Shown: positions 600 through 13,200 of the stretch, piece by piece
Numbering within the stretch: position 1 is the first letter of the stretch
How the letters are laid out: each line of letters starts with the position of its first letter
DNA from: Selaginella moellendorffii
Lineage: Eukaryota > Plantae > Lycopodiophyta
Direction: 5' to 3'
DNA length: 13,200 nt
Assembly (NCBI RefSeq): GCF_000143415.4
Contig: NW_003314555.1
Span: 1 to 13,200, forward strand
Notes under the pieces: model-generated
Seen by the model: only the letters and a program-made list of their open reading frames with translations
Told to the model about the DNA's origin: nothing
Databases searched by the model: none
Made by a program: the position numbers and the translations under genes

Positions 600-614
600 C
601 CCCTATGATAAGAT

Positions 615-743
615 TAGTCCCTCAATATTGCTATATAGTAACTTACTGTGTCTGCCAAACACCCTCGCTATCATGCCTTATATATTGGTTCTGTTTCAGA
701 TCCATATGCTTATGATAAGTGTTTAAATCTGCCAAAGAGGCAT
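615..743 (+). repeat. Dispersed repeat copy A (inverted relative to copy B at 2163-2294)
   Basis: Aligns to the reverse complement of 2163-2294. Identical blocks TAGTCCCTCAATATTGCTA (615-633) and TGCCAAACACCCTCGCTATCAT (653-674); the rest differs largely by transitions plus a net 3-nt length difference. Confidence 0.9.
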
Positions 744-7489: not shown

Positions 7490-7741
7490 AAGGGCAGGAA
7501 GCATAATGGAACTCTTCCCAGAACTCCCCATCACAGTCCGCCGGTCGCGCATGACAAGGACGGCACAGCTGAGCTCAAGCGGCTGGAGCAGATTGACCCC
7601 AAAGCGGTAGCTTCCGTTGCTCGAGCGCGGCGGTGCATCCATGCTGCCTGGTTCAAGGACAATCCCAGGCAAGCCTGCATAGCTGCTCTCGATCTCTACG
7701 CTCGCACCAAGAAACCTCGAATCAAGCCCTCGCGCGAGTAA
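7490..7741 (+). other. Start-less, GC-rich open frame (possible orphan terminal exon or gene fragment)
   Basis: 83 codons open between TAA 7487-7489 and TAA 7739-7741: ...PPVAHDKDGTAELKRLEQIDPKAVASVARARRCIHAAWFKDNPRQACIAALDLYARTKKPRIKPSRE*. CpG-rich, unlike the adjacent TE DNA. Candidate acceptor CACAG ends at 7536. No family recognised. Confidence 0.3.
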
Positions 7742-7822
7742 AATGCGGGCGGCAGCGATCAGGCACACAATTCCTCGAAATCTTGAATCGGACTCGTGGC
7801 ATTCATACCACACCTTACAGCC

Positions 7823-7828
7823 TTTATT
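7823..7828 (-). terminator. Candidate polyadenylation signal of the NTPase-REase-PHD gene
   Basis: AATAAA on - about 150 nt downstream of the stop codon at 7981, in an AT-rich 3' UTR-like stretch. Confidence 0.4.
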
Positions 7829-7980
7829 AAGTTACATATAGCTTTAAAAGATAAATGGAATGCACAATATCTGCAAACTTGAAGATGTTCCTAGACAAAA
7901 ATTATTGATACTTGTAGAACTGATGCAATTGACAGTTGTGGTGGTTGCTGACGATTGTTTGAGCTAAGCACACAGGCATC

Positions 7981-10038
7981 TTACGATTTGAAATACTGCG
8001 CACAAGCGGGGCACATGAACGGTACCTGAGTGACACAGTTGACTTCGTTTCTACGTTCTTCCCCTGCTTCTTCGACTAGATCTGCCCCCTGTTCTGGATC
8101 CACCACCAGTGCTGGATTGTAGTGGACACAAGGCTGGTGGTACCACAGGTCACAAACGTCACACTGCACCCAGGGAGCATCGCCTCTATCTTCCCAGCAG
8201 TCGGAGCAGCTTTGCAAATCCTGTGACAGACGAGAGTTCCATTAAAGAGGAAAAGGAACAAGAAAATAAAAGACAGCATACCGTTCTGGCTGTGTTTTTC
8301 CTGAGCTCGTCCAGCGTCTCATCAATCCTCGAAAGTTGTACACTAAAGAAGCTGAAAGGCATCACGACAACATAATACTCGAGGCCAGGATGCACTCTGG
8401 ATGTTGCTCGGTATGAGACCCACCTGTCCGTGTAAATCACCCACACAAGCACCTTGATCCGCTTGTCGCCAACAAACAGTTCCTCAGCCTTCTTTGCCGT
8501 CTTCTTGTGATGAGTGATGGCGTTCTTGGCGACAGAAAAATGGAGAGCCACGATAAAGTTTTCGTCTTCCAAGTAGGTGTCAATGCCAGCGTGGTTAAAG
8601 TCGTATGGGACATGCATTGTTCCTTCAACGGAGAGCAGCTTTCCGGACATTGGTCCATGGAAGTTGAGGACGTGCTTCACTGTTATGTGTGCTCTTTTGC
8701 CTTGTGCGTAATAAAAGCCTTGAGTCATAAACTTTGTGCTGAGGATTCCCGCCATTTCGGCATTCCAGCCGATGCGAGCCATGTTGTCGTCCTTAGCAAC
8801 GGCTTGTACCCAGAAGGTGACCTGCTTCCGCTGCTCATCGAGGTCATCCTCGCGCATGAGTCCAGCTAAGGTGCTAAGCGCATAGGAATGAAAATGAGGG
8901 GTGAGAGCCTCGAGCGTTCCATCTTTGCCCACGTAGAAGCACTTGGGCTCTAGCAGCAGAGGAAGCCTTGGAACTGTTTCTGTGCCCGTCAACTCTTTCT
9001 GGAGATGCTCTCGAACGTTCCCTCCCAGGTGGCGCTGGATGAACGTACGTATATCTGCCTCAAATGATATGATGCACTGGTGGAACACTTCCATGTCTGT
9101 GTCGAATTGATCCAGCAGCCTTGGAACTCGACCTGTTTTAGACAGATCGACGCGCTGGAACTGAAAGAGGTTGAGATAGGATGCCAGTTCTTTGTCCTAC
9201 AAAGCGCACACATCTCAGAATGTGAAGAACAAGACGCCTAAGAACTTACATTCAGTCCTCCAACAACCAGCTTGTACTGCGGGGCCTTGGGATGACGAAG
9301 GACTTGCGTCCATACACTTGAAATTGAAGCGCAAAAGACGACGACACAATACTCGAGAAGGCGGCAGAGAGATTGTACCCCCGGACTATCTCTCGCCATG
9401 TTGCCGTCATCAACGACAATGGTCAGGTCCACATTTATCATCCTCTTCAAGAAGTTTTCCACGTCGAAGATCGATACTTGGCCCGCCTCTATCGCTTCGA
9501 GCTCCTGCAAGGCAGCGTTGTCGTCCACAAAAGCCTGAAACAGCCCATCCCAGAGCGTATTCTCCGGGGCCCAGGCCATTTGAGCTCCGTCGACCAGCAT
9601 AATCCGACGCGGCCGAGACGAGGAGCCGATCCTGTCGCGCGCGAACTTGCCATAGAGGTAGAGCACAGACGCTGCGACGCTGCAACTCTTGCCAGCGCCC
9701 GGGGTGCCCGTTATGTACCTGAAACCGTAAATACCGTAAGGACGAAGCTGCTTGCGACCGCGCTTTCCTGGAGGCGAGACTATCTTCGATTCTGGGAGTT
9801 TGACCTCGGGGCGCTCCTCCTCTATGAAATCGATGAGCTCCTTGGTGAGAGGCCTGCCCATGTAATCAAACGTCGTCCGGTGCGAGAAATGGTAGACTTC
9901 CATAACCTTGGTCGGATCCTGAAGATCGGCTTCAGTGAGCAGGGCGGAGAAAGCCATGAGCAGCCCATGGATCCTCTCCGCATCCTCACGACGGACATCC
10001 ACAACCCTCTGGCGCTTGACACCGCCGCCGTCTTCCAT
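7981..10038 (-). CDS. 647-aa P-loop NTPase + restriction-endonuclease-like domain + PHD finger protein (Crinkler/RHS-type NTPase-REase-like); exons 10038-9250, 9196-8282, 8220-7981
   Basis: ATG at 10038 (the 10062 start in the track is TTG). Intron 1 9249-9197 (53 nt, GTAAGT..TTTGTAG) and intron 2 8281-8221 (61 nt, GTATGC..CACAG) are both phase 0 and join three track ORFs in frame (263+305+79 aa) with no stops. Walker A GTPGAGKS (9708-9685), Walker B-like IVVDD (9420-9406), TGRVPRLL, HVPYDFNHAGIDTYL..IVALHFSVAK..HH, and a C4HC3 PHD. The gene structure is well supported; the REase/CR assignment is less certain. Confidence 0.8.
7996..8208 (-). other. PHD finger (C4HC3) in exon 3
   Basis: C-S-D-C ... 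W-V-Q-C-D-V-C-D-L-W-Y-H-Q-P-C ... F-M-C-P-A-C; all eight zinc ligands are present. Confidence 0.85.
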
Positions 10039-10049
10039 CCCAATACAAA

Positions 10050-10071
10050 AAACCCTATCCAAAAACCCTAA
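10050..10071. promoter_or_regulatory. Two telo-boxes (AAACCCTA) just upstream of the ATG
   Basis: AAACCCTA at 10050-10057 and AAACCCTAA at 10063-10071, 12-33 nt upstream of the ATG at 10038; a typical position near plant TSSs and 5' UTRs. Confidence 0.6.
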
Positions 10072-11118
10072 TAGTGCAGAGACGTTACGAAAGGAATATA
10101 TGTAAAAAATAAAGAATTTTGGACTATTTTCTCCCCATTTGAGTTGGCTATGGTGTGTGAGCTATGGTGCTCACCACTATCTCTAGGAAGCTACCTCTCA
10201 ATGTCTGTGACCCAGATTATTTACCTTGAGAGCTATTGAGAATGCTGAAGCTGTGCTTATAGTTTGAAAATATAAACTATAGGTGCAACACAATTTGCAC
10301 CTTATCATTTTATGTCAAATCCAACATAGCACTGCCACGATTGAGTTGCTTTGTCTAGGACAAACAAACTCACTCTTATTGGCCACTTCACTACTAGATA
10401 TTCTGCAACATGGCTTATTATCGCCAGGTTATTGTTTTGCATCTTCATTTCTCTTTCTTGTTTTTTCTTCTTTCAGTCTCTGGGAGGCATATGTATTCCT
10501 TTTCTCTTGAAGGAATGTTTGGTGGTCTACAAAATGATATAGGATTGTAATAGTTATCTTTGCCACCACTTAGGATTTACATTCTCTCCATCTATTCCTC
10601 CTTTTATGTCCATTGCAATCCTAGACCTTTAGTCATAAGTTCCACTTGTTTCCTCTCGAAAGGAATCTCCATTCCTTAACCAGGATGCCAGTAGGTATGG
10701 ATCTCTATGTTGCTTTGTTTATCCTAAATGATCATCCACCAGAGCTGCTGGCAACGATCAAATGGAAAGTTCCAAGGGATAATGCTGGCCTGGCTGCGTG
10801 AACGATCAAAGATCGTAGATCAGGTTTCGCCACTCTCCCTATATCCTCACCGTCTTTGCCTGATTTCTCCCAAACCAAAAGAAGCAAGTCTTTCCTTGTG
10901 GGATTTGATTGATAAGTTGGAGGAAAGCGAAGTTGCTGCTGGTGCTATTGTTCTTCATTTGAATCGTCTGTGTTGATAGGGCGCCGTCAAATGCCAGTAT
11001 CCGGTTTAGAGCTAATCTGAAAATACGCTAAATATAATTTTTGATTAGAACCACTCATTTAATTAGGATAAAAACCAACCCAACAAAATTTACAACAGGC
11101 AAAATTTGGCTGTCCATT

Positions 11119-13200
11119 TTATATCAACATCCCCATCTTCTTCCGAGCAGCCTTGAGCTCCTCGCCAACCTTGGAAGTGTCTTCCATCAGAAACTTGTCA
11201 ATCTGTGCTGCCGCTTCCCTCCCTTCGGCAATCGCCCACACAACCAGCGATTGTCCTCTTCGACAGTCACCAGCGGCAAAGACACCCTTGACATTTGTAG
11301 CAAATTTGCCATACTCTGCTTTAAATGTGGTTGCTGCATCATTGGTAGCCACTTTGAGCTTCTCAGCTACGTCCTAGAAAGTAAAATCGTCAGCTGGAAT
11401 GAAAAGAAAAGAAGAATTTAGCTCATTTCACCTGTTCTGGTCCCACGAATCCCATGGCCAAGAGCACCAAATCTGCCTCTATTATCTCTTCCGACCCTTC
11501 GATTTCCTCCCTCTGGAATCTCCCACTCGCGTCCTTAAACCACCGCACCCGTTTGAGCACCAAGCCGCTGACACGGTTATCACCATCGGTGATAAACTTC
11601 TTTGTAGTCACCTCGTACGACCTGGGGTCACTACCAAACTTCTCCTTTGCCTCGGCATGCCCGTAATCGACGCGGAAAACTCGTGGCCACTGCAACAATC
11701 GCGAGCCGTAAGGAACACTCCAACACAGAGACGAAAGGACAAGAAACTCTTACCTGTGGCCAAGGATTCCCCGGTGCACGAGTTGCAGGAGGCTGAGGAA
11801 GTAGCTCCAGATTTACAACGCTCTTGCAGCCGTGGCGGACTGCAGTGCCGATGCAATCTGTGCCTGTATCGCCTCCTCCTATCACCACCACCTTCTTGTC
11901 TTTGGCGGATATGTAGTTGTTGTCCTTGAGCCCCGAATCCAGCAAACTCTTGGTATTCGCGTGAAGAAACTCCATCGCAAAATGTATGCCTTCATATTCT
12001 CGGCCTTCTACTTTAAGGTCCCTGAAGAAAAACAAATAAAAAGATGGTTAGATTTAGAAACAAGTGAAGAATTCCATACCTGGGCTTAGTAGCGCCACAA
12101 GCAAGTAGTAAGCTATCATAGTCGGACATTAACCTCTCCACCGAGAATAACTTGTCAACTCCGACATTCGCATTAACGATGAACTCGATCCCTTCGGCAG
12201 CCATCAGGTTCACTCGCCGTTGAACGACCTCCACTTTATCGGTCTTCATGTTCGGTACACCGTACATCATGAGGCCTCCAATTCTATCCGCTCGCTCAAA
12301 CACTGTCACGGAGTGGCCGGCCTTATTGAGCTGATCAGCGGCTGCTAGACCTGCCGGACCGCTACCTACAATCGCCACTCTCTTCCTGTAAAGAGACAAC
12401 GACGTGAGAAACAAACGACGTGAGTAAAACTTGTCCCTACATACCCGGTTCGATAAGCTGGCGGACGAGGAACCATCCAACCTTCCTCAAAGGCTTTGTC
12501 GATAATGGTACACTCCATCGTCTTAATAGAGACCGGGTTCTCTATAATTCCCAAAACACAGGCACCCTCGCAAGGAGCAGGGCACACACGTCCCGTGAAC
12601 TCTGGAAAGTTGTTGGTTTCCAGGAGCCTGTCCAAGGCTTCCCGCCAACGACCTTGGTGAACAAGTTCGTTCCATTCCGGAATCTTGTTTCCAAGGGGAC
12701 ATCCACTATTATCCTGCAGATACAAAGAGATGACTAAATAACATAGATGAACTGGAGGGGAAGTCATACCTGGTTGCAGAATGGAGTGCCGCAATCCATA
12801 CACCGGGCAGACTGGGTTTTAAGGAGGTCATCATTCCTGGCGGTAGCAAGGACCTCATTCCAGTCTTGCATTCGTTCCTGGGCCGGGCGATATGGAAGTG
12901 TTTCTCGTTCATACGAGATAAATCCCCGATGCTTAACAGCGTCCGGAATTTTTGTTGGCCGCGCTTTGGCCGGAGTCTGAAAACAAGGCAAGCACGTCAG
13001 AGTTGAAGGCGACATGAATATTCAATTTTACCTCGGCTACTGCAGCCGCTCCTCCGTTGGTAGCTGCTTCAGCCATTTTCTTCAATTCCTGGAAAGCATC
13101 CACAGCGGCCAGTCGCGCTTCCTCCTCCTCTGCCGCTCTTTTCTTGGCCTTCTCCTCGTTGAGAGCTCTTTTGTAGTCGCGAGGGAAAACTTTCACGAAC
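11119..13200 (-). CDS. GLT1: NADH-dependent glutamate synthase (NADH-GOGAT), 3' part; exons >13200-13032, 12976-12770, 12713-12445, 12385-12080, 12021-11754, 11689-11432, 11373-11119
   Basis: End of the alpha-like domain [11 protein letters not shown], a linker, then the GltD-like domain in the same chain: [42 protein letters not shown] (Fe-S cysteines), GSGPAG and GGGDTG dinucleotide-binding motifs, [18 protein letters not shown]. Six GT-AG introns of 55, 56, 59, 58, 64 and 58 nt keep the frame; stop at 11121-11119. The 5' part lies outside the window. Confidence 0.98.

What the first reader, a model, noticed from the sequence alone, without database searches (positions are those of the whole stretch)
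7981..10038. Hidden three-exon gene fusing a Crinkler/RHS-like NTPase-nuclease module to a PHD chromatin reader
Seen: three separate track ORFs join through two canonical phase-0 introns into one uninterrupted 647-aa protein, with telo-boxes upstream and AATAAA downstream. It has Walker A (GTPGAGKS), Walker B-like IVVDD, a TGRVPRLL motif, a P-x3-N-x2-G-I-D..hhhh-H-F-S-V..H segment and a complete PHD finger. Established: an NTPase followed by a PD-(D/E)xK REase fold is the core of Crinkler/RHS-type eukaryotic effectors, proposed to derive from transposon-associated modules; PHD fingers commonly read the histone H3 tail. Inference: a nuclear, histone-mark-guided NTPase/nuclease. It could be a domesticated effector, a selfish or mobile element with chromatin targeting, or a genome-defence/cell-death factor. 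I do not recognise this architecture as a named plant gene.
Basis: partly seen in the sequence, partly recalled or inferred. Interest (0 to 1): 0.85.

Follow-up and report, generated by a model that had tools for sequence, protein, structure and literature searches.

The report
Crinkler-like ATPase-nuclease-fold gene with PHD finger
A spikemoss (Selaginella moellendorffii) gene, expressed and already annotated as uncharacterised, joins the ATPase plus nuclease-fold module best known from Crinkler/RHS proteins of fungi, oomycetes and trypanosomes to a plant-type histone-reading PHD finger, so it looks like a domesticated conflict module aimed at chromatin.

Summary
Three minus-strand exons (10038-9250, 9196-8282, 8220-7981) join through two GT..AG phase-0 introns. 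RNA contigs from four studies skip exactly these introns. The 647-aa product is identical to RefSeq XP_024523766.1, "uncharacterized protein LOC9641073", of Selaginella moellendorffii, so the gene is annotated, not hidden.

- **ATPase:** residues ~105-262 model as an ORC/Cdc6-, TnsC/MuB- and STAND-like AAA+ core.
- **Nuclease fold:** residues 382-566 model with pLDDT 76 as a restriction-endonuclease fold. Its best shape match is a Crinkler-header protein cluster of Mucoromycota.
- **Whole module:** full-length fold matches include Crinkler-N and trypanosome RHS proteins.
- **PHD finger:** it is complete and closest to plant ALFIN-LIKE fingers.

Three qualifications apply. No Pfam Crinkler or RHSP profile matches, and there is no Crinkler header or signal peptide. 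The canonical (D/E)xK is replaced by [H/Q/K]-x-[S/T/A] in every paralogue, so nuclease activity is doubtful.

By sequence the family is found only in Selaginella, as about five paralogue groups that share one intron position. They lie among ordinary genes, and this window shows no flanking repeats.

Best reading: a domesticated, header-less Crinkler/RHS-type module fused to a plant PHD finger, acting on chromatin. Its function is untested.

The parts
10050..10070 (.). Two telo-boxes (AAACCCTA at 10050 and 10063), 12-32 nt upstream of the ATG, at the 5' end of the RNA coverage.
   Evidence: 2 found, about 0.5 expected in the whole window. RNA contigs reach 10052-10066.
9250..10038 (-). Exon 1, aa 1-263. 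It holds an NLS-like KRQRV (aa 8-12), the invariant YMGR motif (59-62) and the AAA+/STAND-like P-loop core.
   Evidence: NTPase fold matches are (ORC5 Z 9.8, TnsC 9.6, MuB 9.5, Cdc6, Apaf-1/NLR).
9685..9708 (-). Walker A, GTPGAGKS (aa 111-118). G111, G116 and K117 are invariant in the family.
9400..9423 (-). Walker B-like TIVVDDGN (aa 206-213). D210 is invariant.
9197..9249 (-). Intron 1, 53 nt, GT..AG, phase 0. Its position after GG[LYF][NT] is shared by all paralogue groups.
   Evidence: joint in 4 RNA runs.
8282..9196 (-). Exon 2, aa 264-568. It holds the helical lid with the TGRVPRLL (GxP-like) motif, a poorly modelled linker that may be a winged helix, and the REase-fold domain.
9113..9136 (-). 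TGRVPRLL motif (aa 284-291). T284, G285, V287, P288 and L290 are invariant. It resembles the GxP motif of STAND/ORC-type lids (inference).
8288..8842 (-). REase (PD-(D/E)xK) fold domain, aa 382-566. Helix 1 carries invariant E410. The G467-I-D469 motif sits at the start of strand 2. H481-F-S483 sits in strand 3 where (D/E)xK is expected. H493 is invariant.
   Evidence: Domain model pLDDT 75.6, pTM 0.77. VIA-align: R.BspD6I Z 8.3, McrC 7.5, N.BspD6I 7.4, then FokI, Can2, Bse634I and others. Foldseek: McrC E 2.8e-4. Atlas shape search: Crinkler-header cluster TM 0.67. Motifs.
8221..8281 (-). Intron 2, 61 nt, GT..AG, phase 0, just before the PHD exon. Among the loci examined it occurs only in this subfamily.
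   Evidence: joint in 4 RNA runs.
7981..8220 (-). Exon 3, aa 569-647 plus the stop codon. It is a C4HC3 PHD finger with a 38-residue acidic last loop.
   Evidence: Pfam PHD E 2.9e-6. Best solved relatives are ALFIN-LIKE 1 (E 3.3e-5), 1we9, ALFIN-LIKE 3 and the KDM5A/B PHD fingers.
7823..7828 (-). AATAAA polyadenylation-signal-like hexamer, about 155 nt after the stop.
   Evidence: RNA coverage fades at about 7858-7892.

Best explanation
This is an intact, spliced and transcribed nuclear gene of Selaginella moellendorffii (LOC9641073). It belongs to a small gene family that sequence searches find only in Selaginella.

The protein is a header-less version of the NTPase-(HTH)-REase module known from the C-termini of Crinkler/RHS-type (CR) proteins. 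To this module a plant ALFIN-like PHD finger has been added at the C-terminus and basic NLS-like clusters at the N-terminus.

Most likely mechanism (inferred):
1. The PHD finger docks the protein on H3K4-methylated nucleosomes.
2. The ORC/Cdc6-, TnsC- and STAND-like AAA+ domain works as a nucleotide-dependent switch or oligomeriser.
3. The REase-fold domain contacts DNA. It lacks the canonical second acid and lysine in every paralogue, so it more likely serves as a DNA-binding or structure-sensing module than as a classical Mg-dependent nuclease.

On this reading the protein is a domesticated conflict-system module working on chromatin, not a secreted effector or an active transposon.

Shown here: gene structure, expression, fold assignments, family range and selective constraint. 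Inferred: nuclear location, the histone mark read, loss of nuclease activity, and biological role.
For: - **Splicing and annotation:**
- **Fold of aa 382-566:** nearly all top VIA-align hits are PD-(D/E)xK nucleases. Foldseek finds McrC at E 2.8e-4. AFDB hits include PD-(D/E)xK and Rpn transposase-nucleases, and the C-termini of fungal NACHT or unnamed proteins.
- **CR link, found by three routes:**
  - Foldseek on the full model aligns aa ~10-560 to Crinkler-N proteins (A0A0C2Z6Y9 E 2.5e-11, A0A397VNN7) and to RHS proteins (F9WKD4, annotated RHS; Q4DD28, unnamed in the output and RHS only from my recall).
  - The ESM Atlas shape search puts a Crinkler-header cluster of Mucoromycota first for both models, with TM 0.67 over 161 residues for the domain.
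  - Language-model features of aa 50-568 score 0.97 with 213-217 shared features against Mucoromycota clusters. The first cluster's model superposes on that Crinkler cluster at TM 0.89. Exon 2 alone also points to RHSP and Crinkler neighbours.
- **Literature:** NTPase+HTH+REase is described as the commonest Phytophthora CRN C-terminus, and CR proteins are reported from land plants (PMC5289972, PMC6131194 and PMC12957317, all citing Zhang et al. 2016).
- **NTPase class:**
- **PHD:**
- **Resident gene rather than mobile element:**
  - All five paralogue groups share one intron position.
  - The paralogues sit among ordinary genes such as GOGAT, RNase P p29, RtcB and PP1.
  - No flanking repeats are found.
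  - The locus is syntenic with a second copy at 97.5%.
- **Constraint:** dN/dS is 0.34 against the 97% copy and 0.53 against the 85% paralogue. By region, the PHD is 0.03 and the REase fold 0.30.
- **Degenerate active site:**
Against: - No sequence-profile link to Crinkler or RHS families. Pfam RHSP, RHS_N and Crinkler give no hit in 12 members at E up to 10. Pfam and NCBIfam are silent on exons 1 and 2.
- The CR link rests on predicted structures and embeddings. The full-length model is poor (pLDDT 50, TM 0.2-0.34).
- Prokaryotic AAA+/REase architectures score only somewhat lower (AAA_14+DUF4143, AAA-ATPase_like+PDDEXK_9, McrBC).
- E410, D469 and H493 are conserved, so a non-canonical active site cannot be excluded.
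- dN/dS near 1 in the NTPase between recent paralogues could mean relaxed constraint.
- The HTH between the NTPase and the REase fold was not resolved.
- Histone binding and nuclear localisation are untested.
Confidence: 0.6

Rival explanations
1. An active histone-mark-guided NTPase-nuclease. The REase domain would cut DNA under NTPase control, in the manner of McrBC, and act as a genome-defence or cell-death executor on chromatin.
For: The REase fold is supported, with McrC among the best matches. E410, D469 (in most copies) and H493 are conserved, and dN/dS is 0.30 in this domain. In CRN8 the cell-death activity was attributed to the REase domain (PMC5289972).
Against: Strand 3 carries [H/Q/K]-x-[S/T/A] where (D/E)xK is expected. 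No lysine is conserved nearby. The PD aspartate is Asn in P0001 and P0014. RNA contigs matching the gene were recovered in at least 14 runs, with no sign of silencing in the four runs examined. That fits poorly with a constitutively toxic nuclease, but it is weak evidence.
Confidence: 0.2
2. A convergent or independently derived AAA+/REase protein. It would descend from a prokaryotic ATPase-nuclease family (AAA_14+DUF4143, AAA-ATPase_like+PDDEXK_9 or McrBC-like) or from a STAND/NLR-type protein, and would not be kin of the Crinkler/RHS module.
For: Such bacterial and archaeal architectures appear among the fold and feature neighbours, with TM 0.48-0.54 and feature scores near 0.90. Weak Pfam hits in paralogues go to AAA_22, AAA_16, NACHT and nSTAND. 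There is no RHSP or Crinkler profile hit.
Against: Eukaryotic CR-type proteins rank first in three different searches and align over the whole two-domain module. The prokaryotic rows score lower.
Confidence: 0.12
3. The gene belongs to a selfish or mobile element (a transposon-borne NTPase-REase) that still moves in the Selaginella genome.
For: The NTPase resembles the transposition AAA+ regulators TnsC and MuB. AFDB neighbours of the REase domain include proteins annotated as MULE or PD-(D/E)xK transposases. Zhang et al. 2016 proposed a transposon origin for the CR module (title, and as cited in PMC5289972). Several dispersed paralogues exist.
Against: No terminal inverted or direct repeats lie around the gene. 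The same neighbour, NADH-GOGAT, is present in the second copy. There are only about five paralogue groups, 27-34% identical to this protein, all sharing one intron position. The neighbourhoods are ordinary. No transposase was called next to any copy.
Confidence: 0.05

Closest known systems
Crinkler/RHS-type (CR) NTPase-HTH-REase C-terminal module (Zhang et al. 2016; CRN effectors of oomycetes, Crinkler-like proteins of Glomeromycotina, chytrids and Basidiomycota, trypanosome RHS proteins)
   Same: The order is the same: a P-loop NTPase followed by a REase-fold domain. Fold matches run across the whole module. The best shape match of the REase domain is a Crinkler-header cluster. The nearest feature neighbours are Mucoromycota clusters whose model superposes on that cluster. 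The presumed site of action is nuclear.
   Different: This protein has no N-terminal Ubl/LxLFLAK header, no RHS_N domain and no signal peptide. No Pfam RHSP match is found. The REase (D/E)xK is lost. A C-terminal PHD finger is added. It is encoded by a plant, with introns, as a low-copy resident gene.
McrBC and other prokaryotic AAA+ plus PD-(D/E)xK systems (AAA_14+DUF4143, AAA-ATPase_like+PDDEXK_9)
   Same: An AAA+ NTPase is coupled to a REase-fold domain. McrC is among the best solved matches.
   Different: McrB and McrC are separate proteins, and McrC has an intact D..(D/E)xK. The prokaryotic systems have no chromatin reader. They score below the CR-type neighbours.
Plant ALFIN-LIKE PHD fingers (AL1, AL3, 1we9) and KDM5A/B PHD fingers
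   Same: These are the best sequence matches of the PHD finger (E 3e-5 to 9e-4). The pattern C-x2-C..D-x-x-W-[IV]-x-C-D-x-C-x-x-W-[YF]-H-x-x-C-V..P-A is shared, including the two Trp positions. From my own knowledge, these fingers read H3K4me3/me2.
   Different: This finger has a 38-residue acidic insertion before the last Cys pair. It sits at the end of an NTPase-REase protein rather than after an Alfin DUF3594 domain. Binding has not been tested.
ORC1/Cdc6, Sir3 AAA+ and STAND (Apaf-1/NLR) NTPases
   Same: These are the best solved matches of the NTPase core (Z 8-9.8). The family has an upstream conserved GR motif and a GxP-like motif after the core. From my own knowledge, plant ORC1 also combines an AAA+ domain with a PHD finger.
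   Different: There is no sequence-level membership (Pfam hits are below cut-off). There are no BAH, LRR, WD40 or TPR parts, and the domain is followed by a REase fold.

Membership tests
Crinkler (CRN) effector | N-terminal Ubl header domain (LxLFLAK/HVLVxxP; Pfam PF20147 Crinkler) | tested here: not met
   No PF20147 hit in P0018 or in any of 12 family members at E up to 10. The N-terminus is a hydrophilic helical region carrying KRQRV.
Crinkler (CRN) effector | Secretion signal or delivery into a host | tested here: not met
   The N-terminus MEDGGGVKRQRVVDVRRED has no hydrophobic signal segment (read directly from the sequence). The gene is a resident plant gene.
CR-type NTPase-HTH-REase module | P-loop NTPase with Walker A and Walker B | tested here: met
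   GTPGAGKS and IVVDDGN are present, with G111, G116, K117 and D210 invariant.
CR-type NTPase-HTH-REase module | C-terminal REase (PD-(D/E)xK) fold domain | tested here: met
   Domain model pLDDT 75.6. VIA-align and Foldseek hits are REase-fold nucleases.
CR-type NTPase-HTH-REase module | Intact REase catalytic residues (D ... (D/E)xK), as reported for example for CR-REase 5 (PMC6131194) | tested here: not met
   Strand 3 reads H-F-S here and Q-I-T, K-I-T, Q-I-A or Q-F-A in paralogues. D469 is Asn in P0001 and P0014. The mapping is by secondary structure, not by a residue-level superposition.
CR-type NTPase-HTH-REase module | HTH / winged helix between the NTPase and the REase domain | tested here: inconclusive
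   Residues ~300-400 are modelled with pLDDT below 50. Helices and a short hairpin are predicted, but without confidence.
CR-type NTPase-HTH-REase module | Specific relationship to known CR proteins (sequence or profile) | tested here: inconclusive
   No Pfam RHSP or RHS_N hit. Crinkler-N and RHS proteins are nevertheless top fold and feature neighbours. The CR-NTPase and CR-REase alignments of Zhang et al. 2016 could not be obtained.
Trypanosome RHS protein | Pfam RHS_N (PF20445) and RHSP (PF07999) | tested here: not met
   No hit in 12 members. Only fold-level matches were found, to F9WKD4 (annotated RHS) and to Q4DD28 (unnamed in the output).
PHD finger (PF00628) | C4HC3 zinc ligands with PHD spacing, and a Pfam score above the gathering threshold | tested here: met
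   All eight ligands are present. PF00628 scores 27.6 bits against a cut-off of 24 on exon 3. On the whole protein it scores 22.6 bits, just below. PDB PHD hits reach E 3e-5.
H3K4me3-reading PHD subclass | Aromatic cage residues and binding to methylated H3K4 | not testable with these tools
   W585 and W594 align with the Trp residues of ALFIN-LIKE and KDM5 fingers. Binding itself needs peptide assays.
Transposable element | Terminal repeats, target-site duplications, multiple near-identical dispersed copies | tested here: not met
   No flanking direct or inverted repeats. The position is syntenic. The paralogues are old and share an intron.

The most novel reading that the evidence does not exclude
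The Selaginella family descends from a Crinkler-type NTPase-REase cassette acquired horizontally from a Mucoromycota (arbuscular-mycorrhizal-type) fungus. It then gained introns, lost the delivery header and the nuclease chemistry, and was welded to the plant's own ALFIN-type H3K4me reader. A microbial effector module would thus have been turned into a plant chromatin factor, possibly a decoy or guard for incoming Crinkler effectors that act on host DNA.
Probability: 0.15. Interest if true: 0.75.

Novelty: new variant of a known kind. Interest (0 to 1): 0.5.

Why it matters
[quoted passage not shown] Here such a module has no delivery header. It is low-copy, intron-bearing and expressed, it is under purifying selection, and it is fused to a plant histone reader. 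That makes a concrete, testable case of domestication.

The case could show what the NTPase-REase pair does when it is not a toxin. It could also show whether the REase fold can be kept as a non-catalytic DNA module, and whether plants reuse effector-type modules on their own chromatin.

The family seems confined to one lycophyte lineage, so the general impact is moderate.

Tried and rejected
- Pfam and NCBIfam on exons 1 and 2 gave nothing.
- PDB sequence searches on exons 1 and 2 gave nothing useful.
- The search for homologous proteins with exon 2 gave nothing, because the full-length kin fall outside its length window. With the family profile it returned only Selaginella fragments.
- A phmmer search of 1.84 billion representatives with exon 2 found five proteins, all from Selaginella. 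No sequence-level bridge to other taxa was found.
- The search for related loci with the REase-domain alignment found no relative in viral contigs. For metagenome and genome contigs the alignment was too divergent to make patterns.
- Rfam found nothing in the window.
- The repeat search found no repeat flanking the gene.
- The key paper, Zhang et al. 2016 (NAR 44:3513), is not held. I could not check whether it already lists this Selaginella family or its PHD fusion.
- No held paper mentions the locus tags.
- The full-length AlphaFold model was poor (pLDDT 50). Only the domain model and the better-modelled NTPase core (block pLDDT about 60-83) were used for fold claims. The PHD and linker regions of that model were not used.
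- The secreted-effector reading was rejected, because there is no header and no signal peptide.
- The active-transposon reading was rejected, for the reasons given under the rival explanations.
Full report
**Observation**

The gene lies on the minus strand. From the sequence and ORF list and a script, the structure is:

| Part | Window coordinates | Size |
|---|---|---|
| Exon 1 | 10038..9250 | 263 aa |
| Intron 1 | 9249..9197 | 53 nt, GT..AG |
| Exon 2 | 9196..8282 | 305 aa |
| Intron 2 | 8281..8221 | 61 nt, GT..AG |
| Exon 3 | 8220..7984 | 79 aa |
| Stop | 7983..7981 | |

Both introns are in phase 0 and the product is 647 aa. Twenty-four public runs were listed for the stretch, fourteen of them RNA runs with 0.69-0.81 of the sampled words. 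I laid the contigs of four runs from four studies on 7600-10400. Each run has one contig that skips 61 nt and one that skips 53 nt, exactly at the proposed junctions, with CT..AC ends on the + strand. Coverage runs from about 7858 to 10066.

Two telo-boxes (AAACCCTA) sit at 10050 and 10063, right at the transcript's 5' end. About 0.5 would be expected in the whole window. An AATAAA lies at 7823-7828 on the gene strand.

One caveat: many variant letters in the RNA contigs are those of a 97% identical second copy. Expression is shown for the group of near-identical copies, not strictly for this one.

**Identity**

A phmmer search of 1.84 billion cluster representatives with exon 2 returned only five proteins. 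All are uncharacterised proteins of Selaginella moellendorffii. A search with the closest of them recovered the window's own cluster. Its member P0018 is XP_024523766.1, "uncharacterized protein LOC9641073 isoform X1", 647 aa, from a 13,200-bp contig. It equals the three exon translations placed end to end. The gene is thus annotated in RefSeq and not hidden, but nothing is known about it. An older model (EFJ04460, 693 aa) has wrong ends. No paper in the library mentions the locus tags.

**Family**

- There are five paralogue groups, 27-34% identical to this protein, plus a close paralogue at 85% and twins at 97%.
- Four of the five representatives found end in a PHD finger.
- All groups share the intron after the GG[LYF][NT] motif. 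The family therefore diversified inside the plant genome after that intron arose.
- The paralogues lie among ordinary genes such as NADH-GOGAT, RNase P p29, RtcB, S6PP, PP1 and RCC1.
- The window is collinear at about 97% with scaffold GL377570 across GOGAT and this gene.
- No direct or inverted repeats flank the gene.

**Selection**

| Comparison | Region | dN/dS |
|---|---|---|
| 97% copy | whole gene | 0.34 |
| 85% paralogue (intact frame, in-frame indels only) | whole gene | 0.53 |
| 85% paralogue | PHD | 0.03 |
| 85% paralogue | REase-fold domain | 0.30 |
| 85% paralogue | NTPase | about 1.06 |

The counts are small.

**Anatomy**

Pfam recognises only the PHD finger. The full-length AlphaFold model built from a 12-sequence family alignment is poor, with pLDDT 50. 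Its NTPase core has block-mean pLDDT of roughly 60-83.

- **NTPase.** VIA-align places the core with ORC4/5 and Cdc6 (Z 8.8-9.8), the transposition ATPases TnsC and MuB (8.8-9.6), the Sir3 AAA+ domain, and STAND proteins such as Dark, ZAR1, CED-4 and NRC2 (about 8). Family-invariant residues include M60-G61-R62 upstream of the P-loop, G111/G116/K117 (Walker A), D210 (Walker B), and T284-G285-x-V287-P288 after the core. This pattern recalls the GR and GxP motifs of STAND/ORC-type NTPases; that comparison is my inference.
- **REase-fold domain.** A separate model of aa 382-566 reached pLDDT 75.6 and pTM 0.77. Against 48,161 PDB representatives, nearly all top hits are PD-(D/E)xK nucleases: R.BspD6I small subunit Z 8.3, McrC 7.5, N.BspD6I 7.4, then NucS, Can1/Can2, FokI, LlaBIII, Bse634I, SgrAI and Cfr10I. 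Foldseek agrees, with McrC at E 2.8e-4. No single Z is high, but the consistency supports a REase fold.
- **Active-site positions.** Mapped on the secondary structure, helix 1 carries invariant E410, D469 sits at the start of strand 2 (the 'PD' position), and strand 3 reads H481-F-S483 where (D/E)xK is expected. The paralogues have Q-I-T, K-I-T, Q-I-A and Q-F-A at that place. No nearby lysine is conserved, and D469 is Asn in two copies. H493 is invariant. The fold is kept under constraint, but the classical catalytic set is incomplete. I judge nuclease activity doubtful, not excluded.

**Link to Crinkler/RHS proteins**

Three different searches point the same way.

1. Foldseek with the full model against AFDB clusters aligns residues ~10-560 with a 'Crinkler effector protein N-terminal domain-containing protein' (A0A0C2Z6Y9 [167-710], E 2.5e-11; also A0A397VNN7). 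It also aligns with the RHS protein F9WKD4 and with Q4DD28, which the output leaves unnamed and which is RHS only from my recall. Fungal NACHT or unnamed proteins and proteins that I recall as oomycete, Volvox, Naegleria and Rhizophagus entries appear too. The organism column was blank, so those taxa rest on my memory of the accessions. TM-scores are low because the query model is poor.
2. The ESM Atlas shape search ranks a Crinkler-header cluster of Mucoromycota first for both models. For the REase domain the match is TM 0.67 over 161 residues at rmsd 3.5.
3. Language-model features of aa 50-568 score 0.97 with 213-217 shared features against Mucoromycota clusters. The first cluster's model superposes on the same Crinkler cluster at TM 0.89. 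Exon 2 alone had already pointed to RHSP-containing and Crinkler neighbours.

[quoted passage not shown] 2016).

Against membership: no Pfam Crinkler, RHS_N or RHSP hit appears in any of 12 family members, even at E 10. There is no header and no signal peptide. Prokaryotic AAA+/REase architectures are also among the neighbours, at lower scores. I therefore file it as 'works like, and probably derives from, the CR NTPase-REase module', not as a Crinkler or an RHS protein.

**PHD finger**

All eight zinc ligands are present. The last loop holds a 38-residue acidic insertion, which is why Pfam matches only the first 32 model positions. The best solved relatives are plant ALFIN-LIKE 1 (E 3.3e-5), 1we9 and ALFIN-LIKE 3, followed by the KDM5A/B PHD fingers and TAF3. 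The alignment keeps W585 and W594 opposite the Trp residues of those fingers. From my own knowledge these are H3K4me3/me2 readers, so H3K4-methyl reading is the most likely specificity. That is an inference. The plant-type finger suggests the fusion happened in the plant lineage.

**Mechanism proposed**

The protein would be nuclear, given KRQRV at aa 8-12 and GKRGRKQ at 91-97. The PHD finger would dock it on H3K4-methylated chromatin. The ORC/TnsC/STAND-like NTPase would act as a nucleotide-dependent switch or oligomeriser. The degenerate REase fold would contact DNA. All of this is inferred. The fold assignments, expression, constraint and family range are shown.

**Rivals**

| Rival | Probability |
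|---|---|
| Active chromatin-guided nuclease | 0.2 |
| Convergent AAA+/REase protein unrelated to CR | 0.12 |
| Active mobile element | 0.05 |

**Novelty**

This is a known kind of module in a new setting: header-less, intron-bearing, low-copy, PHD-fused and, by sequence, confined to Selaginella. I could not read Zhang et al. 2016, which may already list plant CR proteins or even this family. That limits the novelty claim. The scan itself has two other unverified first-stage notes on paralogues in this genome.

**Restrictions**

The gene is an intact plant gene, not a broken toxin or effector.

Noticed in passing
window 11000-13200 (minus strand): The 3' part of an NADH-dependent glutamate synthase (GOGAT) gene lies upstream of this gene, in the same orientation. 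ORFs carry [17 protein letters not shown] and similar motifs. The same neighbour is present in the second copy (L001 713-8804).
   Followed up: partly
window 7534-7796: Collinearity with scaffold GL377570 ends at about 7806. The next 263 bp match the 5' end of the GOGAT locus (L001:597-859) at 98.9% and are covered by RNA contigs. The small contig may therefore hold a GOGAT - this gene - GOGAT-start arrangement, or it may be a mis-join. L001 also has 88-91% GOGAT fragments downstream (15067-16537).
   Followed up: partly
window 8352-8423: RefSeq isoform X2 (P0019, 623 aa) removes 24 aa (521-544, two core strands of the REase fold), consistent with a 72-nt GT..AG intron that I infer at these coordinates. 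RNA contigs break at 8415-8444, but no such joint was reported.
   Followed up: partly
P0020 (SELMODRAFT_446658, 994-kb scaffold): A third copy, 97% identical and without gaps, is fused to glutamate synthase in an old gene model. The assembly thus holds three near-identical copies: two haplotypes plus either a duplicate or an unplaced haplotig.
   Followed up: no
L002 10001-12172 (paralogue P0001, 150 kb from the twin on GL377570): The published P0001 model skips 28 codons, yet the locus reads through in frame. Between this paralogue and the window gene, dN/dS is about 1 in the NTPase and 0.03 in the PHD. Its Walker A is GISGAGKT and its 'PD' Asp is Asn.
   Followed up: partly
window 609-710 and 2199-2300: An inverted repeat with 102-nt arms, 76% complementary and 1488 nt apart, lies in the AT-rich left part of the window. 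It may be the ends of a small non-autonomous element.
   Followed up: no
P0015, P0016 (SELMODRAFT_424112, _425182): Short PHD-type fragments (227 and 255 aa) related to the P0002 paralogue lie on the same scaffolds as P0007/P0008 and P0002/P0006. This suggests tandem partial duplicates.
   Followed up: no
AFDB hit D8QVP6: Another protein, a 481-aa 'AAA+ ATPase domain-containing protein', matches aa 66-476 of the model at fold level. I take it to be a Selaginella entry from the accession; the organism column was blank. It may be a more distant family member without a PHD finger. Its sequence was not obtainable here.
   Followed up: no
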